From Chiloscyllium plagiosum (taxonomy: Eukaryota): DNA of 35,636 nt. Within the stretch, counting starts at the first letter, position 1, and each line of letters begins with the position of its first letter. The stretch lies in assembly GCF_004010195.1 (NCBI RefSeq), contig NC_057711.1:3616460-3652095 (forward strand). The letters are read 5' to 3'. The position numbers were made by a program, and so were the translations under genes. Positions 6,170 through 30,427 of this stretch are shown one piece after another. Below the pieces are notes generated by a model. The model was not told the origin of the DNA. It made no database searches and was given only the letters and a program-made list of their open reading frames with translations.

Positions 6170-6231
6170 CTGGATCAGATGGCTGTTGGGCCTGAGCAGT
6201 CTCAGGAGTGCTGGATGAACCTGGATCATTT
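6170..6231 (-). CDS. Probable cytoplasmic exon of the V-set receptor ((R)NDPGSSSTPETAQAQQPSDP)
   Basis: Strong acceptor ccttgtgtgtttttcag; 62 nt open in phase 2-1; donor CAG|gtacta; Ser/Pro/Gln-rich and in phase with exon 7213-7169. Read-through of the donor gives GTRCTLTDRSMSILDTVTERM*. Confidence 0.5.
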
Positions 6232-7168
6232 CTGAAAAACACACAAGGATCATGAATATACCAAGGAAGCAAATGGTAAAAACCCAGGACGCAGCAAAAA
6301 GCATCATGTGTTTTTTGATAATTCAGATCATGGGGGTCACTGACTGGTCCTGGTTACCCTTGAGAAGGTGATAGTGAAATGTTCACTGGGTCAAAGTTCT
6401 GGAATTCCCTCCTTAAGGGCACTGTGGCTCTACCAACAGCACGTGGACTGCAGCAGTTCAAGAGGGCGACTCACCATCACCTTCTCAAGGGCAACTAGGG
6501 ATGGGCAATAAATGCTGGCCCAGCTAGAGATGCCCATGTCTCTCTGTGAATAAAAATGATGTTCAGACTTAGACACAAATCTCCCATCTCACCCTTGAAT
6601 AATCCATCACCGGAAACAGTCTTAATTTGGTACCAGAATGTGACTGGCACCCATGGAATCCATGGTTTAGTCAGCAGCTGTAACACAGGGAGGGCTTCAG
6701 AAACTGTCAGGAATCACAGTGATAAACAAATGATTCCAGGCAACTCTAGGTCAGCTTTGTTCAGCTAGTCACGGGACAGGGAGGGAGAGTATTGGAGATG
6801 AGAGGTAAATTCCTGCAGGGGCTTCTCATCTGCTGTAACTTTGGAGCTGTTACAGGGCTTGGAAATATTGGAAAAAGAAGAATGATTCAGAAATTACATC
6901 CCCATCCTGTGGAAATACATCTGCTTGGAGAAAATAGTAAATTTCACAAAAACTGCAAGTGACAACATTTCATTCTTTTCCTCCATAAAACATTCATTAA
7001 AACTCAAAGTATCTGCTGTGATGAAAATGAGCAACATTTTAATTTTACATGAGGGTGAATTGCAGGTTAATTTGGGAAAAGGGTAATCACAGGTGAATCT
7101 GGAGGTGGAGATTTGCAAACAGCTGGAAATTGACAGATTCTGATCAAAATGAGGAACCTGTCATTTAC

Positions 7169-7213
7169 CTCAGTCTGTTGAGATCACTCTCCCACTGAGT
7201 TTTTGAGCAGCTT
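7169..7213 (-). CDS. Probable cytoplasmic exon of the V-set receptor (SCSKTQWESDLNRL(R))
   Basis: Branch-like CTAAT, then tgctttgtccttttaag (NAGNAG); 45 nt open in phase 2-2; donor GAG|gtaaat. Confidence 0.45.
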
Positions 7214-8466
7214 CTTAAAAGGACAAAGCATATTAGCAGCTCATCAGCAATGGGCTGCATTCTGTCTGTGAGCAAGAGTATTCAATTCAACCCTGAAACA
7301 GAACATTTCTGCCATCAATCTTGCATCATTCATTAATTATCCTACCTCCTTGAAAATGTGATCAGCTCGATTTGCTGTGAAAACCCTAAAGAGACAAAAG
7401 TGATTGTTAAATGTTTGTTGTGTTATGAACAAATTTGCTGCTTTGTCTCCACAGTTGGAAGTGTTTCAAGCAAAACCATGACTTCTCAACAACCTACACA
7501 AAATGCACAGTTTGCACAGAACTCAGAATGTTTTGTGACACTTACACCCTTTATTCAAGTGTGTCTGACATAGCCCAGTCCAAGATCTGTAATTGACCAA
7601 GTCGGGTTAGAGTGTTTTAAGATGATCAGTGGGAACAAAGGATCAGATGTAGGAAGGTGTGTTGCCTCAAAGAGCAGAGACAAGGTAAGAGAGAATATTG
7701 TTGTAATCCCAGTTATTACTGGACAAGTCACACCCAGACACACAACCTGGCTTGCTAGATGATATTTAGATATTTGTTGGCTTATAATGAAATTTTCTTT
7801 CTGTGAAAGATAAGTACACAACAGTACACATATTGCTTTAATGTAAACCAGAAGTTTATTCAGAAAAAAATGAAGATGCAATAGAATAAACCAAACTACC
7901 TACATCTGACAAAAATTCAAAGATTTTAAAGAAGAAAGCATGATCCAAATAGTGCAAAACACTGTAAATTATAAAACAATAAAAGCTTTTTCATTGTACC
8001 CAAATATTTTCACTGGTACAGTGATCAAAAACACAAATTGCATAGTACCCACAAATACTACTCATGCTACACGCTCACCACAATACTTGTTTATATCACT
8101 TTGGTAGATTTAAGCCATTGCAATTTAAACTTGTCAGTTGAAAATGCACATAGTTCTTCCTGGAACTAGATACAGCTGAGTTTAAATGCACTCAGTTTTA
8201 AGTAACCTCTTCAGGGTTTGGTCTTAACATTTGTAGTCTGTTACTAACACTAACTCTTCACTTTAAAGTAAAATAGTTCAGTATACCCTTCCATTCTCAG
8301 GAATGAAGGTAAATACTGCCATATTCATCAAAAGATTTCACAGGGCTACTCAAACAGAGCAAAGCTAAAAATAAAACTTCCTCCAAACTATGGGGATATC
8401 CTTGAAGCTTTCAAAAAAAGTTCCAGAAATTTCTAAAAAAAGCCTTGATGGGCCTTTATCTATTTC

Positions 8467-8822
8467 ACTGTCAACAGGGGTGGTACCAGGGGACTGGAGA
8501 GTGGCGAATGTTGTGCCCCTGTTCAAAAAAGGGAATAGGGATAACCCCGGGAATTACAGGCCAGTTCGTCTTACTTCGGTGGTAGGCAAAGTAATGGAAA
8601 GGGTACTGAGGGATAGGATTTTTGAGTATCTGGAAAGACACTGCTTGATTAGGGACAGCCAGCACGGATTTGTGAAGGGTAGGTCTTGCCTTACAAGTCT
8701 TATTGAATTCTTTGAGGAGGTGACCAAGCATGTGGATGAGGGTAGAGCAGTGGATGTAGTATACATGGATTTTAATGACTTGGATGAGGGAGTCAAAGGG
8801 TGGGTCAGTAAATTTGCAGAAT
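8467..8822 (+). mobile_element. CR1 LINE reverse-transcriptase fragment with an internal deletion
   Basis: VPGDWRVANVVPLFKKG...NYRPVRLTSVVGK...QHGFVKGRSCLTSL...VDVVYMDF is joined directly to NDLDEG...SKFA. Confidence 0.9.
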
Positions 8823-9167
8823 AGTTTGATATATTTGAGTGCCTTTCTTGACCGTTTTCGAGATCATTGAAGAGTTTATCACATGTCTGTGCATCTCGAG
8901 TCAGTTTTAGGACAGACCAGGAAACCACGGGAGATTCACTTCCTGAAAGTATATTGGGGAAGGAAATTGATATTTACAAGCAACGTTGACATCAATGTGA
9001 ATATTACTGGCATCAGATTTCACAGCTCGATATTTAAAAATGTATTTTTAACTTCTACCAGCTGCCAGTGCATTAACCTGGTCTGGATTAATAACCCAGT
9101 GCCATTTACACAACAGCGCCATCTCCACATGGGGACCTATCGGAAACCACACTGAGCAGTTTAGTTC

Positions 9168-9675
9168 TGTGTTGGTGTACTGTGTGCAGTTCTGGTCGCC
9201 TCACTTTAGGAGAGATGTGGAAGCTTTGGAGAGGGTGCAGAGAAGATTTACCAGGATGTTGCCTGGAATGGAGAGGGAGTCGTACGAGGATAGGTTGAGA
9301 GTTCTCGGCCTTTTCTCGTTGGAACGGCGAAGGATGAGGGGTGACTTGATCGAGGTTTATAAGATGATCAGAGGAATAGATAGAGTTAGACAGTCAGAAA
9401 CTTTTTCCCCGGGTACAACAGAGTGTTACAAGGGGACATAAATTTAAGGTGAAGGGTGGAAGGTATAGGGGAGATGTCAGGGGTGGGTTCTTTACCCAGA
9501 GAGTGGTGGGGGCATGGAATGCGCTGCCTGTGGGAGTGGTAGAGTCAGAATCTTTGGTGACCTTTAAGCGGCAATTGGATAGGTACATGGATGGGTGCTT
9601 AAGCTAGGACAAAATGTTCGGCACAACATCGTGGGCCGAAGGGCCTGTTCTGTGCTATATTGTTCTATGTTCTAT
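9168..9675 (+). mobile_element. CR1 LINE 3' end
   Basis: YCVQFWSPHFRRDVEALERVQRRFTRMLPG...RGDLIEVYK, followed by a TGTTCTATGTTCTA tail. Confidence 0.9.
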
Positions 9676-9869
9676 CTTGCTGGGCCATAAAACAATTTAA
9701 GATAAACAAAAATCCATCAATTCTAAAGTTAGGCCTCAAATCTGTTCTTAGAAGAAATCACCAAAACTACAACAGTACTCACAAGCCAGTTATTAATCTT
9801 AGACATGCAGAAAATCAACATGCCACTGACTTTAAAAACAAAAAAAAACAAACTTAGAACAAATACTAA

Positions 9870-10900
9870 TAAATACTGCAAGCTGGTTGGGAGGGTGAAC
9901 TGTGAAGAGGATACAGAGATACTTCAGTACAATTTGGACAAGCTCAGTACAAATTCATTGCAGTTGAAGTATAATGTGTTAAGTATGAGGTTATCCACTT
10001 TGGTAGCAAAAAACAGGAACAAGACAATTTGCTAGAATTCCCTAGATCCAGGGAAGGACCATTCCATTCAAAAATTATGAATGCAACTCCTTTATTCAAA
10101 AAGAGGAGGAGGCAGAGAGCAGGAAATGACAGGACAGTCTGCTTATCCTACAGAGTGAAAATTTTAGAAGCTAATATTGAACATATTATAGCAGGTTACA
10201 TCGTTGCAATAAAAGATGCTGCAGAGAAAAGACAACATTAGGACACACCGTGCTTATAAGTCCAGAAGGCTGTTGATAACGTAGAAAATAGGAACAGGAG
10301 TAGGCCATTCAGCCCTTTGTGTATGCTTTAATATTCAATATGATCATGATTGATCATTCATTTCATGACTTTGTTCCTGATTTCTCTTCATACCATTTGA
10401 TTAATTTAGCCTGAAGAACTATATCTAACTCCTTCTTAAACATACTCAATATTTTGGACTCATTTGCTTTCTGTGGCAGAGAATTCCATAGGTTCACCAC
10501 TTTCTGGATGAAGGAATTTCTCCTCATCTCAATCCTGAATGGCCTACCCCATATTCTTAGACAGTGACCTTTGGTTCATGACTCCCCAGTTGTTGGGAAA
10601 ATCCTTCCTGCACTACCGTGTCTAGTCTTATTAAAATTTCACACGTTTCCCTGAGGTCCCCACCCTCATTCTTCTAAATCACAGTGAATATCATTCTAAC
10701 CGATCCAATCTCTTGTCATATATCAATCCTGCAACCCCAGGAATCCGTTTGAGAAACCTGCATTGCATTCCCCCGCTCGCCATAAAATCCTTCCTCAAAT
10801 AAGGATACCAAAACCTCACACAATACTCCAGATGTGGTCTTACCAAAGCCCTAAACAATTGCTGAAAAACATTCCTGCTGCTGCACTTAAACCTCTCAGT
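9870..10900. mobile_element. Patchwork of degenerate CR1 fragments (plus strand to about 10270, minus-strand 3' end about 10280-10900)
   Basis: ORF 10691..10987 contains RALVRPHLEYCVRFWYPYLRKD; plus-strand remnants include KLVGRVNCEEDTEILQ and NATPLFKK. Confidence 0.75.
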
Positions 10901-11682
10901 CTGAAGCCAAATTGCAACTGACAGAGATGGGGAGGGAGAGGCCATAAAGATAAAGATAACAATTTGAACTTCGCAAGATGACATCATAGAACTCAGGAGT
11001 CTGAGGTCTACAACATGGCTGAGATGTCCTGGATGTTCAATTTGATCAGCCAGTGCAAAGATAGATCATGAGGTCAGCCCCAAAACAGATCAGTGCCTGA
11101 ACATTGCACCCACTGCACAGGCCCGAAGAGGAGTCCATGTTACCATTCCACCCCTAGATATAGCTCTGTTACTCAGACTATCTGACTTCATGCAGCAAAC
11201 TCTCCAAATTTATTTTAACACTAAAAACACATAGGGGAATTGTTTTGATTTGCAGCTTCCTTTCTGTTTAACTGAGATTCTGTGCTGAGTGGAAATGAAT
11301 GGAAAAGATGTGGTCTGTTGGGATTTTGTCAAATGGGATTGAATGAAAAGATATTTTGGTGCATTGAGTTTTGACAGTAATAGGGAGTAGAATGGGGATT
11401 GATCCAGAGTTCAATAGAATGGGTTTGAATGACTTTGCTTGTGAAACAGCCTCAGTGTTCAATCACTCATGAGAAAGCTCAAACAGGAGACAGATACCAG
11501 AGAGTGGCTGATACTATCAAACAGGCCGCCTATACCCATCCTCCACCATGACTAAAAAAAAAGCCAACGTTTTCAGAGAATGTATTGAAGAGGACAGAGT
11601 TGGTGAGGGAAAATTAATGTAGGGTCATCATTTGTTGCAGAACCATATTGTTTTATTTTACCTCATGCTCTACAGAACCCAC

Positions 11683-11793
11683 CTCCTTTCTTCCTGAAGG
11701 CAATGAAGATGATGACAATGATGATGATGATGAGGAGGAGGATGAGCAATGAAATCATCAGTGGATTTACAGTGGTGGGCTCAGTCTTCTTCA
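11683..11793 (-). CDS. Transmembrane exon of the V-set receptor: (V)KKTEPTTVNP-LMISLLILLLIIIIIVIIFIAF-RKKG
   Basis: Acceptor ttcttgctgtattacag; 111 nt in phase 1-1, in frame with V3; 22 uncharged hydrophobic residues followed by an RKK stop-transfer; donor GAG|gtgggt. Read-through gives GGFCRA* (stop at 11665-11663). Confidence 0.85.
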
Positions 11794-12279
11794 CTGTAAT
11801 ACAGCAAGAATGACATTGGTCAGTAATATCTCAGTTAATATCTCAGAGCAGTGAAACCTAAAGCAGGGTTACAGAGCATAAGATTAAATGTACAAACTGG
11901 CCGTTCTCTGATGGAGCAATCCAGTTAGTCCCTCTTCCCAGTCCTTCCCTATAATCCTCTCACTTGCTCCTTTCCAAATACTTCCCAATTTGTCTTCTAA
12001 AAGATCCCCCAATGAATCTGTTTCCACCGTCCTTTTAGGCAGTGCATTACAGATCAGAGCAATTCCTGAAGGAGGTGGCTGCTTAATTCTGTGACACAGA
12101 ATATCGTGTTAGGTGGATATTTTAAATCATTCCTAGATATTGTGCTGACTCATCCGGCGCTAGCTGGGCAAATGGTAAAGGCTGCATTTAACTCCAGCTC
12201 CCCTCGGATTGAGCGAGTGAAGAATTGGCAATAGTGTCCCCTCCTTGGTGTTCCTGCACCCCAGATGTTGTTATGAAGG

Positions 12280-12730
12280 AAACAAAAACAGAAATTGCTG
12301 GAGAAACTCAGCATCTGTGGATAGAAAGTAGAATTAAGGTTTTGAGTCCAGTGACTCTTCCATAGAACTAACAGTTGCTAAGAAAAGGTGCTGTTGACAG
12401 GGCATGGGGGGGAATGAATGAGAGGATAGGAGGAGACAGAGCCCAGAAGGTGAGAAAGACAGTTAGGCAGAAAAGGAATGGATAATGGTTTGCCAGGGAG
12501 AAAGACAATCTGATAATGGGAACCAAAACTAGATAAAACAGCCCATGGCATGATCGCGCCTGGGGTGTGGAGTTGGGGTAAGGACATAGAAGGGGGTGTT
12601 CAGGTTCTAAAGTTACTGAACTCGATATTGAGTCCTGAAGGCTGCAGGGTCCCCAAGCAGGAATGAGATGCTGTTGTCCCAGCTTGCGCTGAGCCTCGCT
12701 GGAGCACTGTAACGAGTCTGAGACAGAGAC
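12280..12730 (-). mobile_element. Penelope-like retroelement 3' fragment (GIY-YIG endonuclease C-terminus, pyrimidine-rich UTR, decayed hammerhead)
   Basis: The minus strand reads LQCSSEAQRKLGQQHLI / frameshift / LGTLQPSGLNIEFSNFRT*, the typical PLE ORF end, then a hairpin GAGTC-ACTG-GACTC-AAAAC at about 12355-12337. Confidence 0.7.
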
Positions 12731-15248
12731 AATAGGGTGACTTTTCCTGATGCTATTTCTGGTGTATCGGTCAGTATCAGATGGTCTGTCCAGTTTCATT
12801 TTTTACCTTTGACATTTTGCAGCTTGAGTATCACTGAGTTGTTTGCTTGGCTATTACAGAATGCAATTAATAGTCCATCAGCTTGCTGTAGGTGTGGAGT
12901 CATTTGTAGGCAGGGCAAGGGACAGAAATCATGGACCTGGTGCTGTTCCTTGCCCAGGTTCGAACCCAACCTAGAGAGCTCTCACCCATTGCCCTGACCT
13001 GACACAATAAACTCAGTTATTGAACACTGATGTACCATCCACCCCTGTCTTGTGCCCGACATTTAGGGCAGGCCATGTGAGAATGGAGATTTGATTCCTT
13101 AAAGGGCATGACTGAATCAGAAATGTTTTTCCAAGTATCAGCAATGGTCAAATGCACCCATTAGATTAGCTTTTCATTTAAATTCCAGATGTTTAAAATT
13201 TTACATTCTGCTGTGGTGGGATTTGAACCCATGGCTCCAACTTGGGTTTGTGGTTTAGTCGCCCAGTGACAGGAGCAGTATACTACCACTTCCCTTTATA
13301 CACCATGTGTGAATGTAAAGCTAGGATAGGTTCCACATGGCTGTGATGCCTCACATCAAATGGACACTGGGGGAGTGTATTTGCACTGATGGACCTATTC
13401 CTGATGAAGGTGTGTATAATTTAATTGTCACCAAGAGGGACACATTAGACTGTTGCACCTTCCTGCTTGAGAAGATGAACTCAATGTCAGTATAATTTGG
13501 GGTTGTTTGGAAATTGAGCTGAATGTTCTGACATCAGAATGCACCTTAAAGGATCAGCACGTCAAATTATTTTAAATATTTTCAAAGTCAAATTTGAAAA
13601 CAAAAATACTGCAGATTCTGGAAATTTGAAATAAACATCAAAATACTGCAAACACTCAGCAGGCTAGACAATATCTGTAGAGAGAAACAGGATTATCATT
13701 TTAATTAGAGTGTCATATAGTCATAGAGATGTAAAGCACGGAAACAGAACCTCTCAGTCCAACCTGTCCATGCCATCCAGATATCCTACATTAATCTCGT
13801 CCCATTTGCCAGCATTTGGGCCATACCCCTGTAAACCCTTCCTAGTCATAGAGTCATGAGATGTACAGCACAGAAACAGACCCTTCAGTCCAACTCATCC
13901 ATGCTGACCAGATATCTCAACTCAATCTAGTCCCACCTGTCAGCACCCGGCCAATATCTCTCCAAACCCTTCCTATTCATATACCCATCCAGATTCCTCT
14001 CAAATGTTGCAATTGTACCAGATTCCACTACATTCTCTGGCAGCTCATTCCATACATGTACCACCCTCTGAGTGAAAAAGTTGCCCCTTAGGTCTCATTT
14101 ACATCTTTCCCCTCTCACTCTAAACCTATGCCCTCCAGTTCTGGACTCCCCCACCCCAGGGAAAAGACTTTGTCTATTTATCCTATCCATGCCCCTCATG
14201 ATTTTATAAACCTCTGTAAGGTCACCCGTCAACCTCCGACACTCTAGGGAAAACTGCCCTGGCCTATTCAACCTTTCCCTATGGCTCAGATCCTCCAACC
14301 CTGGCAACGTCCTTGTAAATCTTTTACAAACCCTTTCAAGTTTCACAACATCTTTCCAATAGGAAGGAGACCAAAATTGTACGCAATATTCCAACATTGG
14401 CCTAACCAATGTCCAGCCTATGATGCTCCAGGGAAGGTAATATGACCTCCCAACTCCTGTACTCAATACTCTGACCAATAAAGGAAAGCATACCAAACAC
14501 CTTCTTCACTATCCTATCTACCTGCGACTTCACTTTCAAGGAGCTATGAACCTGCACTCCAAGGTCTCTTTGTTCAGCAACACTCCCTCAGACCTTACCA
14601 TTAAGTGTATAAGTCTGCTAAGATTTGCTTTCCCAAAATGCAGCACCTCACATTTATCTAAAATAAACTCCATCTGCCACTTCTCAGCCCATTGGCCCAT
14701 CTGGTCAAGATCCCGTTGTAATCTGAGGTAACCTTCTTCCTGTAATCTGAGGTAACCGCTACACCTCCAATTTTGGTGTCATCAGCAAACTTCATGTATC
14801 CATCCAGATGCCTTTTAAATGTTGTAATTGTACCATTCTCCATCACTTCTTCTGGCAGCTATTTCCATGTATGCACTACTCTCTGCAAGAAAAAGTTGTC
14901 CCTTATATCCCTTTTAAATCTTTCCTGTCTCACCTCAAGCCCTCTAGTTCTGGACTCCCCTACACTGGGGAAAAAGACCTTGATTATTCACCCTATCCAT
15001 GACCCTCATGATTTTATAAACTTCTATGAGGTTTCCCCTCAGCCTATGATGCTCCAGGGAAAGTAACCCCAGCCCATTCAGCCTCTCCCTGTAGCTCAAA
15101 CCCTCCAACCCTGGCAAAACCCTGTAAATCTTTTTCGAACTCTTCAAGTTTAACATCGTTCTTACAGCAGGAAGACCGGAATTGAATGCAGTATTCCAAA
15201 AGTGGCCTAACCAAAGTCCTGTACAGCCACAGCTATAATACTCAGTGA

Positions 15249-16070: not shown

Positions 16071-16418
16071 CATGTACCTGCAGCCGAGTGTCTTTCTGGA
16101 TCAGATACTGAGAGTTGAGTCTTGACCTGTATTCTACATGACACAGGTAAGTGTGATTGTCTCTCACACTCAGCTGGTTTATCCTGGTCGAGGCGTTTCC
16201 CTCCTCTGGGTTCCCGATGAGCTCGTACCGATTTCCACTGTGTACAGTTGTCCAATTTCCCTGGGATTGGGCTTTAAATATAACAATGTGTTGGTAGGGC
16301 TCCTTCCTCATCCAGGTAACAGTGGTCAGAGTGTGGGAGTCCCAGCTCCTGAAGATACAGGGTAAAGTAACTGAATCTCCCTCAGTCCCACTCACCACTG
16401 AGACATTTCCCTGAGCAG
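16071..16418 (-). CDS. Ig V-set exon 3 of the Siglec-15-like receptor
   Basis: Acceptor ttcctttcctcag; 348 nt in phase 1-1; donor G|gtaaga; motifs GDSVTLPC, VTWMRKEPY, RYELIGNP, DNHTYLCHVEY and TRLQVH. Confidence 0.92.
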
Positions 16419-17479
16419 CTGAGGAAAGGAAAAACATCAGAATGGATGAGGTCAGTGTGCAGAATTTCTAGTTTAAGTTTCTTACAATTCTTTCAACTTC
16501 ACAATGAAATAAGTAATTAAATATCCCACACATGTTTCTTGCAGGTCTGAACCAGGTTTTATAGACTCCTAAAAAACTCACCCTGATGAAAATCTCTCAT
16601 TCTCGATCCCCTCATTTTGAGTCTCCTATTCTTGAAATTCTTCCAGATTGGAAAATGCACTGAGCCCACCTAAATTCATTTGTCCAGGACACAACATCCC
16701 TCCCACCTCCACAAAATATGTGGATTATTGTTCCCCAGTCTTATACTCCACCTGTGTGCCTTCACTCTGTCCAGAAATCCCATAACAATGATTGAACACA
16801 TGTCTGTGTGAAGGGGAAGATTTCTGATATTAACCTGAACGTAACCTTTTCCTAACTCCAAACCATGACCTGTACCATGAACATAGTTTGATTGAATTCT
16901 ATTCAAGATTAAGATTTCCTACAATACCCACTACCTTATCATGTGGTGGGGGAGAGGAATTAGCCCCATGCTGGACCACCTGTATAAATTAATCATCCTC
17001 TGAAAGAGGGAATCTCTCCCCATCTCCATCCTAATGTGAAATGAGTTTCAGATTCCACCCACATCCTCTCAGGGTCTACTCTCCCAAGACCCCTCAGGAT
17101 CTTGCAAGTTTCAATAAAGTCACTTCTCAATCTTCAGCAACAAGTTGACCCTATCTGACTCTGAACCAATCAGGATGGGCAGGTAACAACGCTCTGAAAT
17201 TCTCAACCAATAGGAGTCAGAGAGGTGGCTCTTCACTTATTTTCGGCCAAGGAGACCTTATGTTTCACAATGTGTTTACCCAATGAGGGATTGGGATTGG
17301 CCTATCTTGTCCTCAACCAATGCCAATTGACAAAAAAGGAGGTAATTCTGCCCACTAGGTCCTTGCTAGCTCCACATAGAAAAATCACTCAATTCCACTA
17401 GGCCCTGCCAGTTTATTCCCTTCAAGTGTCTGCCTGTTTTTTTTTTAAATCAATGACTGCTTCCACACGTACCTCCTTT

Positions 17480-18470: not shown

Positions 18471-18472
18471 TA

Positions 18473-18972
18473 NNNNNNNNNNNNNNNNNNNNNNNNNNNN
18501 NNNNNNNNNNNNNNNNNNNNNNNNNNNNNNNNNNNNNNNNNNNNNNNNNNNNNNNNNNNNNNNNNNNNNNNNNNNNNNNNNNNNNNNNNNNNNNNNNNNN
18601 NNNNNNNNNNNNNNNNNNNNNNNNNNNNNNNNNNNNNNNNNNNNNNNNNNNNNNNNNNNNNNNNNNNNNNNNNNNNNNNNNNNNNNNNNNNNNNNNNNNN
18701 NNNNNNNNNNNNNNNNNNNNNNNNNNNNNNNNNNNNNNNNNNNNNNNNNNNNNNNNNNNNNNNNNNNNNNNNNNNNNNNNNNNNNNNNNNNNNNNNNNNN
18801 NNNNNNNNNNNNNNNNNNNNNNNNNNNNNNNNNNNNNNNNNNNNNNNNNNNNNNNNNNNNNNNNNNNNNNNNNNNNNNNNNNNNNNNNNNNNNNNNNNNN
18901 NNNNNNNNNNNNNNNNNNNNNNNNNNNNNNNNNNNNNNNNNNNNNNNNNNNNNNNNNNNNNNNNNNNNNNNN
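18473..18972. other. Assembly gap (500 N)
   Basis: Run of N. Confidence 1.
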
Positions 18973-19061
18973 AATGAGAGGCAGTTGTAATGTCTATTCA
19001 TAAGCAATCCAGGATACTGGGACAGAGTTTCAGTACCCACCATGGCAGCTGCTGGAATTTC

Positions 19062-19949: not shown

Positions 19950-22370
19950 TTGCTTATCTTTTTTTTCAGCTCTCTCAGTTTTTTCCATCCTTATCTCCAT
20001 GGTGATGCGGGAGTGGGAGAGATGGCTGCTTTCTGTCTGTAGGCTCTAGATGTTTTCCCCATTCAGCAACTGTGTTTACAGAGTTTTTGGAGAAGCTGAC
20101 AGGTAAGATTTTTTCATCAGAAGATTGAAAGCTATCTGCTGGGCGGTTTGAGCAGGAGTCATTATTCATTTGTTCAGCTAAGTGGGTGAATTTATTGAAG
20201 GTTTATACATTTGATTTTTATTCAGATTTATATGCTCTTATTTTTTGCATGCTTAGTCTAATTTATATATAAGCTATTGTAAGTTGCCTCTTTTTCAGCT
20301 TCATGACATTGAGGGCATACAAGAGACACAGAGTTAGGTGGCTTGTAGATTGAGAGAAGTCATAACACATCAGGATCAGTCAGATGGATGACTGTCAGGA
20401 AAGGCAAAAGGGTAGTTCAGAAGTCTTCCGTTGGTATATCTCTCCCAAAGAGATATTGAGTTTTGGGATCTATTGAAAGGATAGTCTTCTAGAGGAATAT
20501 AGAAGAGACAGTCAGATCTTGGGCACTAAGAATGAATTTTATGTTTGGTGGGTTTGATAAAATTTAAAAGAATATTTGTTAAAGGGGACTGTCCTGTCAA
20601 GGGCACAGACAGGAGGTTCTGAAGCAGTGAACATGAATCTAGGATAGAATGTTGCTTTCCCGATATCAAGAAAGGGGGGAATGTAAAAGCGGAAGTTATT
20701 GTGTACATTGATAGGAAAGGCGCAGTTAGGAAAAAATTAAGGCTTTACAGAGTGAATATAAGAGGTTAGGTAGAAGATTATAAAAACAGATCCTCAAAAG
20801 TAGAATCTTTGGTTTACTCCCAGTGCTAAGCTCAAGTGAGGGAAAAAAGGATAAAGGAGAAAAGACTGAAGAAATGGTGTAATGTTCAGGGAATCAGATT
20901 CTTGGATTACTGGGATTTTGTTTCTAGGTGGAGGGATCCGAAGCAGCAGAGTAAATAGAAAGAAAGATGAGAATGGTTTTGAATCTGCAAACAAAAACCA
21001 AATTAATTTGAAAAGACAGACTAGAGCAAGTCAGAGAACAAAGTAAGTCTGAAGAATTAAACTAAATTTACTTCAATGCAAGGGATCTTACAGGTAAGAC
21101 TGATGAACTCGGGGCATGTATGAGAACATGGGATTGGGATGATATATGTATTACAGAAACTTGGCTAAGGGATGGACAGGACTCGCTGCTCAATGTTCTG
21201 GGTTTTAGATACTATCAGAAGTATAGAAAAAGAAGCAAAAGAGGAGGAGGAATTTGGTTTAGCTTGATGAAAATATTACTGTTTTAAGTAGAGAAGATAT
21301 TTCTGAAAACCTCAGTAAGTGCAAAACTTGACCTTCTCTTGAGTAATAAGACAGAGAAGTAATTGAAATGATAGCAGGGGGACACTTAGGCTAAAGTGAT
21401 CATAATTCTATTGGTTTTAACATAGTTATGGAAAAGGCTAAGCCTTCTTTAAAAATTAAAGTTTTTCATTGGAGTAAGGAAAATTTTAAGGCAAGCAAAG
21501 GCAACACTTAGACAATTAAAAGTAGGGCCTTTAGTAGTGTTGCAGAACAGAGAGAGACCTTGGCTTTCATGTTCATAATTCTGTGAAGTTTGCATCACAT
21601 ATGGATAGGATGGTTAAAAAGGTATTTAGCATGCTTGTCTTCATTGTTCAGATATTTGAGTATAGGAGTTGGGACGTTATGCTGAGGTTGAACAGAATGT
21701 CGGTGAAGCCTCTTCATGAGTACTGTCGAGTTCTGGTTACCCAATCATAGGACGGATATTATTAAGCTGGAGAATGTTTTGTAGAGATTTACCAGGATGT
21801 TGCTGGGAATGGAGTGTTTCAGCAATAAAGAGAGGCTGACTACATTGGGACTTTTTTCACTGGAGCATAGGATGTTACAGAGGTTTATAAAATTATGAGG
21901 GATATAGATAAGGTGAATGGCAGGTGTTCTTTCCCTAGGGTGGGGCATTTCAAGACTTTCAGGTGAGAGAAGAAAAATTTTAAAAAGACATGAGGGGCAA
22001 ACTTTTTTTATATACGCATTGGCTCATGTGTGGAACTAATTTCCTGAGGAATTGATGGATGTGGGTACAGTTACAACATTTAAAAGCCATTTATATAAGT
22101 ACACGAAGAAGAAATGTTTGGAAGGATATGGCCAGTTGTATGCAGATGAGACTAGTTTGGATTGGAGGCCTGTGACCAGTAGTGTTCCACAGGGATCGAT
22201 GCTGGGTCCACATTTGCTTGACATTTATATAAATGATGTGAATGAGAATAGACAAAGCATGGTTTGTAAATTTTGAATGATATCAAATTTGGTGGAATAA
22301 ATTGGAGGGAAATGGCTAATTACAGGCAGATGGAACTAGTTTGGTTTGCAATTATGGTTGGCATAGACTT
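19950..22370 (+). mobile_element. Decayed CR1 LINE retaining 5' region, ORF1 (SGNH/esterase-like) and endonuclease remnants, with a large internal deletion and 3' end
   Basis: KGDCPVKGTDRRF...SRIECCFP (compare CR1 ORF1 GDSIVRGTDRRF...CCLPGA) at about 20580; YFNARDL...DICITETWL (APE domain) at about 21070-21170; ORF2 3' remnants at 21500-22370. Confidence 0.8.
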
Positions 22371-22879
22371 TGTTTGGCAGTAAAATAGCTTTTATTGTCA
22401 TGTGGAGTCAATGAGTGCAGTGAAAAACTTGCATTGAAGGAACTATTCCAGATGAAGGTGTTAACACTTTCATTGTAACCAAGAGGGACACATTAGACCA
22501 TTGCAACCTCCTGCTTGAGGAGATGATCTCAATATCAGTATAACCTTAGGTGGATTGGAGATTGAATTGAATGTTCTGAGTGTGTCAAAGTCTTTCCATA
22601 CTGATATCAGAGTGCACCATAAAAGATCAGCACATTAAAATACATTAAACATTTTAAAAATCAAATGCAAAACACAAAAGCAAGATGCTGGAAGTTTGGA
22701 AAAACGAATCAAAATGCTGTAAATACTCAGCAGGCCAGATAACACCTGTCGAGAGAAAAGGTTAACATCTTAGTTCAATGACCTTTCATCAGAAAATCAA
22801 ATCACAAGAAAGTTCACAGAATCTTTTACATTCTTATCACGCCCTGTACAGATGGAACAATGTGTGAATGGCTTCTTAC

Positions 22880-23233
22880 CGGGTATGACATGCACCCGAC
22901 TCTCTTTCTGGATCAGACACTGAATATCCTCTTGTAATGATATGTATTCCACCACACACAGATAAGTATGATTGTCCCTCACATTCAGCTGGTTTATCCT
23001 GGTCGAGGCGTTTCCCTCGTTTGGATTCCCGATGAGCTCATACCGATTTCCACCATTTACAGTTATCCAATTTCTTTGTGGTTGGACTATAAATGTAACA
23101 ATGCGTTGATAGGGCTCCTTCCTCATCCAGGTAACAGTACTCAGGTTGAGATGTCCCATGATCCTGAAGGAACAGGGTAAAGTAACTGAATCTCCCACTG
23201 TCCCATTCACCACTGGGACATCTCCCTGAGATG
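22880..23233 (-). CDS. Ig V-set exon 2 of the Siglec-15-like receptor
   Basis: Acceptor ttgttctatcctcag; 354 nt in phase 1-1; donor G|gtaaga; motifs GDSVTLPCSF, VTWMRKEPY, RYELIGNP and DNHTYLCVVEY. Confidence 0.92.
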
Positions 23234-23999
23234 CTGAGGATAGAACAAACATCAGAATGGATGAAGTCAGAGATTATATTTATTACATTCCCTTCAACTT
23301 CACAATAAAATGAACAATTCAAACTCCACTCATATCTCTAACAGGTCTATCCAAGACATTCCCCTCCAATAGTCATCCTGATCAAAATGTCTCCCCACTT
23401 CTCAATTTAAGGATCTTGAACAGGAAATCCATTGAACCCTCCCAAATTCATTCCTTCATTCATCCATTGCCCAAAGTTAATATTCTTTAAATAAGGTCAA
23501 CTATTTTATAGGAGAAAGTGAGGTCTGCAGATGCTGGAGATCAGAGCTGAAAATGTGTTGCTGGAAAAACGCGTAGTCCAAACTTTCTAAACTTGTCTCA
23601 GTATTTTGGGTGCAGGTGGAGGAATAATTGAACCATGTGACTCTTCGCTGCTTGAACTTTAAAGGTGAGTTGAGAGATGGACTGCTTCCTCATTCCCTAC
23701 TTTAAACAGGTAACCCTTATTTTCAAACCAGTTCATCTTTTGCTCACATATCCCCTCAAAATCTGTCTGGTCAAGTCTCCTCAGACCCTTCTTTCTTTCA
23801 GTAATGTCTCCTTTAATATGTTTTATTTGGTCATGGTTGTCGCTGACTCGGATTATGTGTATTTATTGTCCATCTTGAGTGTCAAGGAGAAACTGTCTTC
23901 TTGAAATGCTGCGGCCCTGAGGTATAGGGGTTACCTGCAGTAATTTTAGAGATGGAGCTCCAGGATTTTGACCAAACAATACTGAAGGAATGGCAATAT

Positions 24000-25770
24000 G
24001 GTAAGAATGGAACCAGACTACTCTGTATTGAGTGAGGCAGCAAAAACAATGAGAGCAGTCACAGCCGTGTCAATCCTGTAAAATCCTTTTCATTAACATC
24101 CTCCTCATTAACATCTGGAAGCCAGTGCAAAAAGTGGATGAGTTGTCTCACAGACTGGTCAACTAACAGTTTCACGGAGACAAACTCATGGAATCATAAC
24201 TCACAATGTCTCAGGCATTCCTATTGTCATTCCTGGATATATCCTGTCCCATTGGCAGGACACACCTGGAAGAAATTGAGGCACTGTGATATACATTTGG
24301 GAGGGGATTGCACTGGGAGTCCCCAACATGAAGTCCCCAACTTAAAGATAACATTGTTAGCCCATGGAACCACAAACTGTAACCTCGTGATCCATGTTAA
24401 CTCCCCACACCACCATTCCCATCAGTGAAGAGTCCAGGTGAGTATGCTGTGAGCAATATCATGGTGGTAAAAACAATGACTGCAGATGCTGGAAACCAGA
24501 TCCTGGATTAGTGATGCTGAAGTCAACAGCAGTTCAGGCAGCATCCGAAGACAGGCAAAATCCGAGGACAGGCAAAATCGACGTTTCGGGCAAAAGCCCT
24601 TCACCTTTTGCCCGAAACGTCGATTTTGCCTGTCTTCGGATGCTGCCTGAACTGCTGTGCTCTTCCAGCACCACTAATCCAGAATGTGAGCAACATCAGG
24701 CAAACCTAAAAATGTGTGGCCCCACGCTGAAACTAGAACCTTCAGGACTTCTTGCTTGTCATACAGCCAGAAACACCACACAACAGAGTCATCATATAAC
24801 CAATGGATCATATGGCTCAGCTGTCCTGAATGGACCATTACTGGTGGTGGACAATTGCTGTACTAGCTGGTTCAGTACAGTTACAACACTGGGATTTCCC
24901 CAACAATTTGTAAAGTTGCCTGGGTATGTCCTGTACACAAAAAGTGAAGTGAGTCTGATTAGGCCAATTACTGCTCTTTCAGTGCACTCTTGATCATCAA
25001 TAAAGTGATGGAAAATGTGAGTGACTGCCCTTAACATCAAGGCCACAGTCAAATGTGTGTAGCATCAAGGAAGCTGAGCAAAACTGAACTCAATGGGAAT
25101 TGGGGAAGAATCTTCCACTGGTTTGAGTCATACCTGGCACACAGGAAGATGGTTTTGGTTTTTGGAGGTCGGTCATCTCAGCTCCAGGATCTATCTGCAG
25201 AAGTTCTTCAGGGTAGTATCCTAGGCCCAACCATCTTCAACTGCTTCACCAATGACTTTCCCGTCATCAAAAGTTCAGAAGTGAGGATGGATGTTCACTG
25301 ATCAACATGGGATGAAGAACATCACCACCTACAAGCTTTCCTCCAAGATGTGCACCATCCTGATTTGGAGATATTTCACCATTCTGTCAGTATCACTGGG
25401 GCAAAATCCTGGAACTCCTTTAACAAGTACATCATGATGGAGTACAGCAGTTCAAGAAGGCAGCTCATCATTCCCTTCTCCAGGGCAATTAGGGATGGCG
25501 AATGAAGGCTGACTGAGCATGTGGTGCTCACATCCCTTTGAACAATTGCAAGATAAATATAGTTCCAAGCCAGGGTGGTGGTGGAGGCAGGTACAACAGG
25601 CATTTAAGGGACTTTTACGTAAGTACGTGAATACACAAGAAATTGAGGGTATGAACCAATAGCAGGCTGAAAGGATTAGTTTCATTTTGTGTCATGTTTG
25701 GCACAATAATGTGGGCCGAAGGGCCCATTCCTGTTTTGTACAGTTCTATCTTCTATGTTCTGAACCCTCA
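24000..25770 (+). mobile_element. Highly degenerate CR1/L2-type LINE remnants
   Basis: WFESYLAHRKMV...QGSILGPTIFNCFTND (ORF 25053..25301), RPITAL, and a CR1 tail near 25750. Confidence 0.7.
24466..24684. mobile_element. Penelope-like palindromic terminal element with a target-site duplication; hammerhead 5' core truncated at the symmetry centre
   Basis: Same GGTAAAAACAATGACTGCAGATGCTGGAAACCAGAT start as 15249; inverted arms around 24605; flanking TGTGAGCAA(T/C)ATCA at 24448-24461 and 24685-24698. Confidence 0.75.
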
Positions 25771-26419
25771 TTGGATGAGCATGTCTCAGGGTGAAGGAAC
25801 CTTCAGCTCACCTTGGCTGAGAGTCTCAGTGTTGCTATCTTCTCTATCTAGTGGCTGAGGTGAAAATGAGGGGAGCTGCCATCTCCCGAATTATTCCAAT
25901 CCTCAGCAGATTGTGAAATTTGAATTGAAAATGTCTGGGACTAAAAACTAATTGCATAATGAACATGTTTCCATCATCATAAAAGAAAACCCATCTGGGC
26001 CATGCATGTCTTTTAGGGAGGGAGATCTGCTATCATTCCCACAGTAATGTGGTTGACTCTTAACTGCCCCATGAATGGCTCACTCAGTTCTGGACAAGGA
26101 GTGAACCCAGCAATGTGAATGAAACTGTGGCTACAAGAACAGGTCAGAGACTAGGTATCCTGTAAATTAACATATTAAGGCCTATTGATCAGTCAGGAGT
26201 ATGATGGAATACTCCCCACTTGCCTGGAAGAATGCAAGAAAATATATTGCTGCTCTGTTATGGTCACGGGGTCAAAATTCTGGAACTCTGATCCTAACAC
26301 CATTGTGGGAATAAAAGTTACTACAAAATACATTGCAGTAAGGCACCAACACTTCCTCCATCAACACTTTCTAAACTAATGACCTCTACCATCATGGTGA
26401 AAATCAGCAGCAAATACAC

Positions 26420-28480
26420 ATCATCTGCACCCTCTCCAAAGCCTCCACATCCTTCCTGTAACCTGGCAACAGAACTGAAAGCAATACTCTAAGTGTGGCC
26501 TAGCTCTAAGTGGGTGGCACGGTGCCACAGTGGTTAGCACTGCTGCCTCACATTGCCAGAGACCCGGGTTCAATTCCCACCTCAGGCAGACTGTCTGCGT
26601 GGGTTTGCTACAGTACAAAAATTTGCAGGTTAGGTGAATTGGCCATACTAAATTGCCTGTAGTGTTAGGTGTGGGTGGATGGTGGGTCAGGTTGGGCTGA
26701 AGGGCCTGTTTCCACACTGTAAGTAATCTAAAATCAAAGTCTTATAAAGCTGCAGCATGACATTCTGACTCTTGTACTCAGAGGATCCTATCCCATAAAG
26801 GAAAGCATGCCATATGTCTTTTTTACCAACCGATCAACTTGTATGGCTATTTTCAGGGAGCTATGGACTTCACAATCACAACATCCTTCTGTACATTTAC
26901 ATTTGATTTCCCAAAGTGTAGTCACACCTACCTGGATTAAATTCCATCTGCCATTTCTCTGCCCATATCTGCAACTGATCTACATCCTACTGTATCCTTT
27001 GACAACATTCTACACTATCCATAACTCCACCAACCTTTGTATCATCTGCAAACTTGTTAAACCACCCATCTACATTTTCTTCAAAGCCATTTGTATATGT
27101 ATCACAAACAGCAGAAGTCCTAAAATGGATCTCTTTGTTACAGACATTCAGCCTGAAAAACAACCTTCTACCACTACCCTCTGTCTTCATTTGACAAGCC
27201 AATTCTGAATCCACATGGCCAGGTCACCGTGAATCCCATGCATCTTAATTCATGTAAACAACATCCACTACTCTACCCTCATCAATCACCTTCATTACCT
27301 CTTCAAAAAACGCAATCAAGTTAGTAAAACATGACCTGATTTTTCATAAATAGGCCATACCTTTCCAAATATGCATCAATCCTATCTCTAAGAATTCTCT
27401 CCAATAGCTTCCCAACAAATGATTTGAGATTCATTGGTCTGTAGTTTCCTATATTATTCCTATTTCCCTTCTTGAACAGAGGAACATCTTTTGCGACCTG
27501 TCAGTCCTCCAGGAACTATTCAGTGGCTAGCAAGGATATAAAGATCTCGGTCAAGGTCCCAGCAATCTTCTCTCTTGCCTCTCTCAATAACCTTGGGTAG
27601 ATACCATCAGGCTTTGGAGAGTTATCCACCTTAATGTTCTTCAAGAGATGTTCTTCTTTCTAGATTTCAAAATGCTCTAGCATATTAGCACTCTCTACAC
27701 AAATCTCACCATCCTCCATATCCCTTTCCTGGGTGAATACTGATGCAACATACTTATTTAGAGTCTCATCACATTCTCTGCTTTCAAGCACAAGTCCCCT
27801 CCTTTACCTTTGGTCCTACCTTCCCCATTGTTATCCTTTTGTTTTTAATGTAGCTATAAAATGCCTTGGGATTCTCTTTAACCCTACTTACCAAAGTAAT
27901 TTCTTGGCCCCTTTTGCTCTCCTAATTTCTTGCTTTCCTTATATTCCTCATGGGTTCTGTCCGATTTTAGCTTCCTAAACCTTAATATGTTTCTTTTTTC
28001 CTTTTTGACTAAATTCACAGCTTCTCTTGTTATCCAATGGTCTCTTTTCTTGCTATCCTTATCCTTCCTCCTTACTGGAATATGCTGGTCTTCAACTCTC
28101 CCCAGAAGGTCTTTAAACAGGTTCCCATGTGTGAAAAAGTAGACATGCCTGAAAACAGCTCCTGCCAATTAACACTCCCTAGCTCCTGCTTAATACTGAT
28201 GTAATTTGCCCTCCCTCAATTTAGTACCTTTTCACAAGGTCCTGACTTATCATTGTTCATAGCTATCTTAAATCACAAGGAGTTGTAACCACTGTTACCA
28301 AAATGCTCTCCCGATGAATAGTCAGTCACCTGGCCAGGCTCATTAGCCAAAACAAGGTCCAGTATGGCCCCTTCTCAAGCTGGACTATCAATATACTGTT
28401 CAATAAACCCTCTTGAATGCACTTAACAAATTCTGCCCTGTCTAAGTCTCTTCCTCTAAGGGAGTCCCAGTCAATACTGG
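26420..28480 (-). mobile_element. Fragmented CR1 ORF2, interrupted by a SINE
   Basis: ARPHLEYCFQFC, NKFADDTKVGGV, DQHIPVRRKDKDSKKRDHWITRE and DWDSLRGRDLDRAEFVKCIQEG occur in collinear order. Confidence 0.85.
26512..26735 (+). mobile_element. HE1-type V-SINE, internally deleted
   Basis: GGCACGGTGCCACAGTGGTTAGCACTGCTGCCTCAC...GGTTCAATTCCC head and TTTCCACACTGTAAGTAATCTA tail. Confidence 0.85.
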
Positions 28481-28800
28481 TTCTTCTTTTCCTCAACCAA
28501 TGCTGATAGAGCAGGGTTCTCATTGGTAGGGATGTTGGAGTTTGAATCCTCAGTGATGTTTTCTCTCTTATCTATTCCTAGTTTGAACACGGCAAATGAC
28601 TGAGTGTGTTAGAGACTGTGGGACGTTGCAGAAATGATGATGGAATGGTCTATAAATTCTAGCTTCATATTACTGCCTTCTGCCTCAGACCTACTGAAAA
28701 AGCCCTGGATAAAGAGCCAAGCTGAGAGCTCCTGGACCAGGTAGAGCCTATTCCCAATGAATTATCAGGTCAGTGACACCATTTGAACATCGATCCTTAC

Positions 28801-29184
28801 CTGTCACTTCCAGATATGTTCCTGTCTGAATTCCAAAACTGCCGATATTGAGCATCACAAAACACAAGTAAGAACCGGCATCATCCCATCTCACTCTCTC
28901 TATCATTAATGAGACATCGTTGTTGGTAAGGTTTCCCACGAATCTGAATCGTTTCCCACCGTCCTGCTGTATCACATTCTCACACAGCTCACCCTGGGAA
29001 TGGTCTGGCCCAGGATATATACAATTAAAGATAACATGCGTGCTAGATTTCATCCATATAATGGAGCCAGTGAGTGTGAGATGAGTGTCAGGGTGGGTGA
29101 AGCTGCAGGGTAAGACAGCGGTTCTTCCTTCTTCAGCCCTCACGTCGTCCGCAACTGTCATTGACCAACCTTTGTCAGAATACG
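28801..29184 (-). CDS. Ig V-set exon 1, Siglec-15-like (sialic-acid-binding Arg replaced by Phe)
   Basis: Long polypyrimidine acceptor ...ccctcacag; 384 nt in phase 1-1; donor CAG|gtaagg. WSMTVADDVRAEEGRTAVLPCSFTHP...IFNC...ELC...RFRFVGNLTNNDVSLMIERV...YLCFV matches my recollection of human SIGLEC15 WSMQVPPEVSAEAGDAAVLPCTFTHP...VFRC...ELC...RFRLLGNPRRNDLSLRVERL...YFCRV. Confidence 0.92.
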
Positions 29185-30317: not shown

Positions 30318-30352
30318 CACTAGCTTTCGGAGTGACGCTCCTTCATCAGGTA
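30318..30352 (-). ncRNA. Minimal hammerhead ribozyme motif (left arm)
   Basis: Minus strand UAC-CUGAUGA-A-GGAG-CGUCA-CUCC-GAAA-G-CUA-GUG. Confidence 0.65.
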
Positions 30353-30427
30353 ATTGTCGAGGGCTCAATTGTAACACAGCAAAAATTTTTGCTATAAATT
30401 CTGTGTTACGATCGAGCCCTCCACAAT

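What the first reader, a model, noticed from the sequence alone, without database searches (positions are those of the whole stretch)
6170..29184. Triple-V-domain Siglec-15-like receptor lacking the Siglec-15 functional hallmarks
Seen: three phase-1 V-set exons splice in frame to a TM exon (V1-V2-V3-TM). V1 keeps the Siglec-15 signature, including the extra C'/C'' cysteine pair (IFNC...ELC). However, the residue after the F-strand Cys, which is the essential sialic-acid-binding Arg in Siglecs (YFCRVE), is Phe, Val and His in V1, V2 and V3 (YLCFV, YLCVVE, YLCHVE). No C2-set exon was seen and the TM has no Lys. Established: Siglec-15 is V-C2-TM with a TM Lys that recruits DAP12, and Siglecs have a single V domain. 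Inference: this belongs to a shark-lineage multi-V receptor family derived from or related to Siglec-15 that binds something other than sialic acid and is DAP12-independent.
Basis: partly seen in the sequence, partly recalled or inferred. Interest (0 to 1): 0.82.

Follow-up and report, generated by a model that had tools for sequence, protein, structure and literature searches.

The report
Shark Siglec-15-like multi-V receptor gene
This is a real, expressed bamboo-shark immune-receptor gene from a large shark and ray family related to Siglec-15, but the "three V domains" count is probably an effect of an assembly gap.

Summary
The three V-set exons are real: minus strand, phase 1/1, Pfam V-set E 1e-11 to 3e-18. 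RNA-type contigs from two runs join V1 directly to V2. V1 is a Siglec-15-type V domain by sequence and by fold. It keeps the extra Cys pair but has Phe where Siglecs have the essential Arg. The window matches Chiloscyllium plagiosum, where NCBI models of this gene cover only part of V3 plus the tail.

The gene belongs to a large shark and ray family that normally reads V1-type, V2-type, TM. In that family 87 of 104 V1 domains keep the Arg. Of 71 proteins with a TM, 24 have a TM Lys and 37 have ITIM-like tails. It fits only this gene, which has an uncharged TM and a 46-residue tail without Tyr.

Orthologue models in two related sharks place a second, Arg-bearing V1-type exon between the counterparts of V2 and V3. 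That is where this window has its N gap. A four-domain (V1-V2)x2 receptor is therefore more likely than a triple-V one. The V2-to-V3 junction and the leader exon were not seen. First readers noted similar genes elsewhere in this genome; those notes are unchecked.

The parts
28801..29184 (-). V1 exon (V1a). It is a Siglec-15-type V-set domain of 127 full codons. It keeps the extra C'-C'' Cys pair and has Phe in place of the essential Arg (motif CFVM).
   Evidence: Pfam V-set E 1.3e-11. Best PDB sequence match is Siglec-15 7ZOZ at E 2.4e-14. The AF2 model has pLDDT 85.3, and its top Foldseek hit is 7ZOZ at E 4.2e-10, TM 0.80. Contigs X8 rec19 and X9 rec27 join its donor to V2.
22880..23233 (-). 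V2 exon (V2a type). It is a generic V-set domain of 117 full codons with motif CVVE.
   Evidence: The contigs that join 28801 to 23233, and the contigs that stop fitting exactly at 22880 with 90 more letters, are. It matches residues 1-93 of C. punctatum P0176 at 90 of 93. It groups with Stegostoma P0166 V2a at 99/90.
18473..18972 (.). Assembly gap (500 N) inside the V2-V3 interval. Orthologue models have a second V1-type exon (V1b, motif CRVE) in the corresponding interval.
   Evidence: Searches give the gap. P0176, P0257 and P0166 show the domain order V2a-V1b-V2b. No second V1-type hit is visible in the window. The gap was not filled or looked up.
16071..16418 (-). V3 exon (V2b type). It is a generic V-set domain of 115 full codons with motif CHVE.
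   Evidence: It is 100% identical, from an internal Met, to NCBI C. plagiosum P0153 and P0154. It matches the P0176 V2b domain at 108 of 115. The AF2 model has pLDDT 89.6, its top fold match is VSIG4/CRIg, and Siglec-15 is at rank 10.
11683..11793 (-). Stalk and transmembrane exon, phase 1/1. The hydrophobic core is uncharged and is followed by RKKG.
   Evidence: It is 85% identical to the P0176 TM segment. Both NCBI C. plagiosum isoforms skip it.
7346..7385 (-). 40-nt juxtamembrane mini-exon, phase 1 in and phase 2 out.
   Evidence: It matches P0154 (15 of 16, the one mismatch where the alignment runs past the donor) and P0176.
6170..6231 (-). 62-nt cytoplasmic exon. The finding's start coordinate is its donor.
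   Evidence: It is a 100% match to P0154. Reading through the donor gives an ORF that ends at 6105. That ORF aligns to the ITIM-like CTYAD of relatives but has Leu in place of Tyr.
5030..5055 (-). Last coding piece, seven residues plus the stop. The tail after the TM is 46 residues and has no Tyr.
   Evidence: It matches the C-terminus of P0154 and P0176.

Best explanation
[quoted passage not shown] It is a member of a large shark and ray multigene family.

The family's ectodomain unit is a Siglec-15-type V domain (V1 type) followed by a generic V domain (V2 type). The family comes in two signalling forms. Inhibitory forms have an uncharged TM and an ITIM-like tail. Activating-type forms have a Lys in the TM and a short tail.

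This gene is a derived member:
- V1a has the sialic-acid Arg replaced by Phe and is spliced to V2a. This junction is shown.
- A V2b exon, an uncharged TM exon and a 46-residue tail without Tyr follow. This part rests on identity to NCBI and orthologue models.
- A second, Arg-bearing V1-type exon probably lies in the assembly gap between V2 and V3. That would make the receptor (V1-V2)x2 rather than triple-V. This is inferred from orthologue models.

As for function, all inferred: the outer head is unlikely to bind sialic acid in the canonical way. With neither a TM charge nor tyrosine motifs, the protein cannot use the usual DAP12 or SHP routes. It most likely acts as a non-signalling binder, decoy or co-receptor. 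TM-skipping isoforms may give soluble forms.
For: Exon anatomy:
- Searches give exons, splice sites and phases.

V1 is Siglec-15-like:
- It is Siglec-15-like by sequence and by fold. The extra Cys pair is kept in 102 and 99 of 104 family V1 domains.

RNA evidence:
- X8 rec19 (449 nt) and X9 rec27 (257 nt) run from 28801 straight to 23233 with 0-1 mismatches.
- X9 rec24 and X10 rec1 stop fitting exactly at the V2 donor, 22880, with 90 further letters.
- X8 and X9 have depth on the exons and zero depth in unique intron bins.

Species and annotation:
- P0153 and P0154 (C. plagiosum) are 100% identical to V3, the cytoplasmic exon and the last exon; P0154 also carries the mini-exon.

Family:
- 86 proteins at E<=1e-10.
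- 70 of 98 proteins are V1-V2.
- Of 71 with a TM, 24 have Lys in it and none of those has an ITIM-like motif, 37 are uncharged with an ITIM-like motif, and 10 are uncharged without one.
- Arg follows the F-strand Cys in 87 of 104 V1 domains and in 0 of 92 V2-type domains.

Orthologues:
- P0176 (C. punctatum) and P0257 (H. ocellatum) read V2a-V1b-V2b-TM-mini-cytoplasmic-same C-terminus.
- P0176 matches window V2 at 90 of 93 and V3 at 108 of 115, but its V1b matches window V1 at only 89 of 125.
- Stegostoma P0166 reads leader-V1a-V2a-V1b-V2b.
- Trees: V2 groups with P0166 V2a at 99/90, V3 with P0176 V2b at 89/96, and V1 falls in a 6-row clade at 97/93.
Against: - No read or contig was seen across V2->V3 or V2->V1b. 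The loose-end letters at 22880 were not among those listed.
- No V1b is visible, and the gap flanks show no similarity to the V1 flanks.
- Both NCBI C. plagiosum isoforms start inside V3 and skip the TM exon. So V3->TM is not shown in this species, and V3 may also have its own transcripts.
- No leader exon was found in 6.4 kb upstream.
- The orthologue proteins are automatic predictions, and four-V models elsewhere in the family could be read-through of neighbouring genes.
- The function rests on motif logic only.
Confidence: 0.68

Rival explanations
1. In C. plagiosum the V1b exon has been lost, and the mature mRNA reads V1-V2-V3-TM, a true triple-V receptor.
For: All three exons are intact and phase-compatible. 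The V2 donor is used. No V1b-type sequence is visible anywhere else in the window. Heptranchias P0164 reads V1-V2-V2-V2-TM, so V2-to-V2 joins are predicted elsewhere in the family.
Against: Two close relatives, with 94-97% identity in the flanking V exons, have V1b in this interval. The interval holds an unread gap. None of the 98 family proteins examined is V1-V2-V2.
Confidence: 0.27
2. There are two overlapping transcription units, or V2 and V3 are alternative exons. One transcript carries V1-V2 and another starts at or near V3 and carries the tail. No single protein would then hold all the V domains.
For: NCBI models P0153 and P0154 begin at an internal Met of V3 and lack V1 and V2. The orthologue models P0176 and P0257 begin at an internal Met of V2a and lack V1a. 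H. ocellatum P0190 joins a V2a-type domain directly to a TM exon of this type.
Against: The V2 donor is spliced onward, so V1-V2 does not end there. V3 has a good acceptor and no leader of its own. A start at an internal Met is what 5'-incomplete automatic models typically show.
Confidence: 0.2
3. The locus is decaying. It is transcribed, but the family member is on its way to becoming a pseudogene.
For: Among 104 family V1 rows, this V1 is the only one with Phe at the Arg position, and it sits on a long branch of 0.45. The ITIM-like Tyr is replaced and the tail has no Tyr. Annotated isoforms skip the TM exon, and one reads the cytoplasmic exon in another frame. No leader was found.
Against: All seven visible coding exons have open frames and canonical splice sites. 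The framework Cys and Trp and the extra Cys pair are intact. The same Tyr-less tail is kept in two other species. Stegostoma V1a (His) and an H. ocellatum V1 of the same clade (Cys) also lack Arg while staying open.
Confidence: 0.15

Closest known systems
Siglec-15 (human, mouse, bird, teleost)
   Same: The V1 domain matches it best by sequence (E 2.4e-14) and by fold (TM 0.80). V1 carries the C'-C'' Cys pair, which the passages read in PMC10264397 call a unique feature of Siglec-15. Fox, golden-mole and bird Siglec-15 are hits at about 1e-11 to 1e-10.
   Different: Per passages read in PMC10264397 and PMC7226832, Siglec-15 is V-C2-TM with the essential R143 and a TM Lys for DAP10/12. Here there is Phe in place of Arg, extra V2-type domains, no visible C2 exon, no TM Lys, and a multigene family in place of a single conserved gene.
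CD33-related Siglecs of mammals
   Same: As recalled, they are a fast-evolving clustered family with paired inhibitory (ITIM) and activating (charged TM) members and repeated loss of the essential Arg. The shark family shows the same pattern. Siglec-8, CD33 and Siglec-7 are among the top fold matches of V1.
   Different: Their domain plan is V followed by C2 domains. This family has V1-V2 modules and no C2. It descends from a Siglec-15-like head, not a CD33-like one. As recalled, human Siglec-12 has two V-set domains, so 'Siglecs have one V' is not absolute.
Predicted multi-V relatives in other elasmobranchs (P0166 Stegostoma, P0176 C. punctatum, P0257 H. ocellatum, P0164 Heptranchias)
   Same: They use the same exon types in the same order. 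P0176 and P0257 share the TM exon, the mini-exon, the cytoplasmic exon and the C-terminus.
   Different: They carry V1b between V2a and V2b, which is not visible here. They are automatic predictions under unrelated names such as 'polymeric immunoglobulin receptor-like' and 'uncharacterized'.
Skate MDIR, teleost NITR, and PILR/CD300/TREM-type V receptors
   Same: As recalled, not tested here, these are multigene V-domain innate receptors with activating and inhibitory forms. PILR appears at rank 33 among the V1 fold matches.
   Different: No MDIR or NITR sequence was on hand, so no comparison was made. V1's nearest relatives are Siglecs, not CD300/TREM.

Membership tests
Siglec-15 (orthologue) | N-terminal V-set domain of Siglec-15 type | tested here: met
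   Siglec-15 7ZOZ is the best of the PDB by sequence (E 2.4e-14) and by Foldseek (E 4.2e-10, TM 0.80, 35% identity).
Siglec-15 (orthologue) | Extra C'-C'' disulfide pair (C95-C104 in human; passages read in PMC10264397) | tested here: met
   Both Cys align to the human pair. They are kept in 102 and 99 of 104 family V1 rows.
Siglec-15 (orthologue) | Essential Arg after the F-strand Cys (R143) | tested here: not met
   The residue is Phe in V1, Val in V2 and His in V3.
Siglec-15 (orthologue) | One C2-set domain between V and TM | tested here: not met
   Eight C2-bearing relatives gave 44 tblastn hits at E<=1. Of these, 43 lie on the V exons and none comes from a C2 region. Caveat: the two N gaps are unread.
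Siglec-15 (orthologue) | Lys in the transmembrane helix for DAP10/DAP12 (passages read in PMC7226832) | tested here: not met
   The TM exon core has no charged residue.
Elasmobranch Siglec-15-related V1-V2 receptor family | V1-type exon spliced to a V2-type exon | tested here: met
   Contigs in two runs join 28801 to 23233. 70 of 98 family proteins are V1-V2.
Elasmobranch Siglec-15-related V1-V2 receptor family | Family-type TM and juxtamembrane exons | tested here: met
   The TM exon is 85% identical to P0176, the mini-exon 94% and the cytoplasmic exon 91%.
Elasmobranch Siglec-15-related V1-V2 receptor family | Either an ITIM-like tail or a Lys-bearing TM | tested here: not met
   The tail is 46 residues with no Tyr, and the TM is uncharged. 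This matches the 10 of 71 family proteins that have neither feature.
Elasmobranch Siglec-15-related V1-V2 receptor family | Leader (signal peptide) exon before V1 | tested here: inconclusive
   None was found in 29185-35636 by motif search, by tblastn with family N-termini, or by an ATG/hydrophobic/phase-1-donor scan. A 311-N gap lies at 31818-32128.
TIM (HAVCR) family, considered for V2 and V3 | TIM-type IgV with six cysteines (recalled, from no call) | tested here: not met
   Mouse TIM-3 is V2's top PDB sequence hit, but only at E 2e-7, with Siglec-15 next at 7e-7. V2 has 3 Cys and V3 has 2. The V3 model's fold matches put TIM-1 and TIM-3 at ranks 41-42.

The most novel reading that the evidence does not exclude
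Cartilaginous fishes turned the otherwise single, conserved Siglec-15 head into a large clustered family of paired receptors built from V1-V2 modules, with Lys-TM activating forms and ITIM inhibitory forms. This would be an independent counterpart of the mammalian CD33-related Siglec expansion, and I found no description of it in print. Within the family, this orthogroup doubled the module and let the outer head drift. Its F-strand Arg became Phe, His or Cys in three species, while the inner V1b head keeps Arg. The tail lost its tyrosines. This pattern would suit a decoy or a shielded-lectin receptor shaped by pathogen pressure.
Probability: 0.45. Interest if true: 0.7.

Novelty: new variant of a known kind. 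Interest (0 to 1): 0.5.

Why it matters
Siglec-15 is treated as a single gene conserved from fish to mammals. A family of dozens of Siglec-15-headed receptors in sharks and rays, with V-V modules and paired activating and inhibitory forms, would show that sialic-acid-sensing receptor families expanded independently in the oldest jawed vertebrates. It would also give a natural series of Arg-kept and Arg-lost heads to test.

For this gene the practical points are three. The public annotation covers only its 3' third. RNA shows V1-V2 is used. The domain count cannot be settled until the assembly gap is read.

Tried and rejected
That stretch is the polypyrimidine tract before the 6231 exon and has no in-frame acceptor. 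The real TM exon is at 11793-11683.
- A leader exon was sought three ways without success. The in-frame stretch just upstream of V1 resembles family leaders only weakly (E 0.022). It has no ATG and is a splice-site pyrimidine tract.
- A chimeric origin of V1 (V1b-like start, V1a-like end) was considered. Identity by thirds shows only that the last third is more diverged, so I dropped the idea.
- Homology between the gap flanks and the V1 flanks was sought as indirect evidence for a hidden V1b. Only the 180 nt before V3 match the 160 nt before V2, at 69%.
- I considered inferring the partner of the V2 donor from the 90-letter contig overhang and where assembly contigs tend to break. Both V3 and a V1b-type exon would fit, so the overhang decides nothing.
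- P0258 and P0259 are C. plagiosum proteins on small scaffolds that came up with the V1 query. They are other paralogues, not V1b.
- Literature: searches found no description of this family. For some searches I saw only the listings. Passages were read in PMC10264397, PMC7226832 and PMC8455134. Subscription papers and supplements were not seen, so a description could exist. MDIR and NITR were not compared because no sequences were on hand.
- Neither V1 nor V2 is in any protein of the searched size ranges. Longer or shorter models could exist.

Full report
**Observation**

The minus strand carries three V-set exons: V1 29184-28801, V2 23233-22880 and V3 16418-16071. Each has an AG acceptor and a GTAAG donor and is phase 1 at both ends. 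Pfam V-set E-values are 1.3e-11, 1.9e-12 and 3.2e-18, so these are not chance ORFs.

**The gap, tested first**

The 500-N gap at 18473-18972 lies in the interval between V2 and V3. It is 3.9 kb below the V2 donor and 2.05 kb above the V3 acceptor. No visible exon abuts it, so it does not break a visible frame. The open question is whether it hides an exon. A second gap of 311 N lies at 31818-32128, upstream of V1.

**Transcripts**

A search for runs with the V1 exon gave four holders from one study of one organism. Their contigs were laid on 22871-28870.
- X8 record 19 (449 nt) and X9 record 27 (257 nt) pass from 28801 directly to 23233 with 0-1 mismatches. So V1 is spliced to V2 in two runs.
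- X8 and X9 cover V2 fully and have zero depth in unique intron bins, as RNA would.
- X9 record 24 and X10 record 1 stop fitting exactly at the V2 donor, 22880, and carry 90 more letters. So V2 is spliced onward.
- The overhang letters were not among the loose ends listed, so the partner is unknown.
- X10 also has contigs across exon-intron borders, which means unspliced RNA or DNA.

**Rest of the gene**

Proteins returned by the searches, laid on the window by tblastn, and the sequence itself define four more exons:
- a stalk and TM exon at 11793-11683, with an uncharged core followed by RKKG;
- a 40-nt mini-exon at 7385-7346;
- a 62-nt cytoplasmic exon at 6231-6170;
- a last coding piece at 5055-5030.

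The tail after the TM has 46 residues and no Tyr. Reading through the 6170 donor gives an ORF ending at 6105. It aligns to the ITIM-like CTYAD of relatives but has Leu in place of Tyr. The finding's start coordinate, 6170, is therefore an internal exon border.

**Species and annotation**

[quoted passage not shown] They are 100% identical to V3 from an internal Met and to the cytoplasmic and last exons; P0154 also carries the mini-exon. Both skip the TM exon, and both lack V1 and V2.

**The family**

- V1 alone finds 314 proteins at E<=0.001 in the representative library, many of them with several matched stretches.
- A two-V relative from Mustelus (P0006) finds 86 proteins at E<=1e-10 in sharks, skates and rays. 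Their automatic names are unrelated: Siglec-15, Siglec-12, pIgR-like, JAML, uncharacterized.
- I classified domains with phmmer against the three window exons.
- Of 98 family proteins, isoforms not removed, 70 are V1-V2, six are V1-V2-V1-V2, one is V1-V2-V2-V2, and none is V1-V2-V2.
- Of the 71 with a recognisable TM, 24 have a Lys in the core with short tails and no ITIM-like motif. Another 37 are uncharged with at least one ITIM-like motif, and 10 are uncharged without one. These counts rest on a hydropathy window and a regular expression.
- Among 104 V1-type rows, which include seven lungfish repeats, 87 have Arg after the F-strand Cys. This window's V1 is the only one with Phe. Among 92 V2-type rows none has Arg.

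The family is therefore an ordinary-looking paired receptor family with a Siglec-type head. The loss of Arg, ITIM and TM charge is particular to this gene and its orthogroup.

**Orthologues and the domain count**

P0176 (C. punctatum) and P0257 (H. ocellatum, same 90% cluster) read V2a-V1b-V2b-TM-mini-cytoplasmic, with the same C-terminus as the NCBI isoform X1. P0176 matches window V2 at 90 of 93 and V3 at 108 of 115. Its V1b, which keeps CRVE, matches window V1 at only 89 of 125, so it is a different exon. Stegostoma P0166 reads leader-V1a-V2a-V1b-V2b, with His at the Arg position in V1a and Arg in V1b.

Trees agree with this picture:
- window V2 groups with P0166 V2a (99/90);
- window V3 groups with P0176 V2b (89/96, not starred);
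- window V1 falls in a 6-row clade (97/93) with P0166 V1a and V1b, P0176 V1b, P0005 and P0190, on a long branch of 0.45.

By position, window V1 is V1a. The expected V1b would sit where the window has its gap, and none is visible. I take the four-V reading as more likely than triple-V, but it is not shown.

**Nature of the domains**

The AF2 model of V1 (pLDDT 85.3) has Siglec-15 7ZOZ as its top Foldseek hit (E 4.2e-10, TM 0.80). Sialoadhesin, Siglec-8, CD33 and Siglec-7 follow. The V3 model (pLDDT 89.6) matches VSIG4/CRIg, nectin-1 and Nav beta-4 first, with Siglec-15 at rank 10. V2 and V3 are thus generic V domains, not Siglec heads that lost Arg. No C2 exon is visible.

**Function**

This section is inferred. 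R143 makes the salt bridge to sialic acid, and R143A abolishes binding (passages read in PMC10264397). The TM Lys mediates DAP10/12 association (passages read in PMC7226832). With Phe at that position, V1a should not bind sialic acid canonically. A V1b with Arg, if present, might. Without a TM charge or tyrosines, the protein lacks the family's two signalling routes. A decoy, adhesion or co-receptor role is most likely, with soluble forms possible through TM skipping. Decay of the locus remains possible.

**Novelty**

I found no paper describing this family. Subscription journals and supplements were not seen. The proteins are public predictions. First readers of this scan noted similar clusters 90 kb away, and a V-V-C2-TM(Lys) gene 9 Mb away, in the same genome. 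Those notes are unchecked. The spliced model was not joined for any search or fold.

Noticed in passing
window 30980-31189 (-): There is an ATG-initiated 70-codon exon with a CRAL_TRIO_N match (E 1.1e-6) and a phase-0 GTGAGC donor. It lies 1.8 kb upstream of V1 on the same strand and looks like exon 1 of a tocopherol-transfer-protein-like gene. Its phase does not fit V1. No later exons of that gene were looked for, so whether one gene is nested in the other is open.
   Followed up: partly
window 11683-11793 (-) versus P0153/P0154: Both annotated C. plagiosum isoforms skip the TM exon. One also skips the mini-exon and so reads the cytoplasmic exon in another frame. The C. punctatum and H. ocellatum orthologue models include the TM exon.
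   Followed up: partly
window 16419-16598 and 23234-23393: The 180 nt before the V3 acceptor match the 160 nt before the V2 acceptor at 69%. The V2-type exons therefore duplicated together with the end of their upstream intron.
   Followed up: yes
window 23471-23670, 24471-24870, 26471-26870: These intron bins have contig depth in the tens of thousands to over a million in all four runs. They are high-copy repeats, and many joints and loose ends there come from other copies. Reverse-transcriptase-like ORF fragments recur across the window, for example at 80-376, 8390-8824, 9169-9441, 14095-14496 and 32140-32417.
   Followed up: no
window 28801-28930 (last third of V1): The E-F-G part of V1 is more diverged from its relatives (23-26 of 43 identical) than the first two thirds (30-37 of 41-43). 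This is the face that binds ligand in Siglecs.
   Followed up: partly
family proteins P0181, P0204, P0215 and others: A second TM exon type has a conserved Lys and a short tail. It occurs in sharks and rays, sometimes as an isoform of a gene that also has other forms. This is a candidate DAP12-pairing activating arm of the family.
   Followed up: partly
P0001 (Protopterus annectens, 1128 aa): A lungfish protein has seven tandem V1-type domains, all with Arg, followed by a C2 domain and a TM. Multiplying the Siglec-15-type head is therefore not confined to cartilaginous fish.
   Followed up: no
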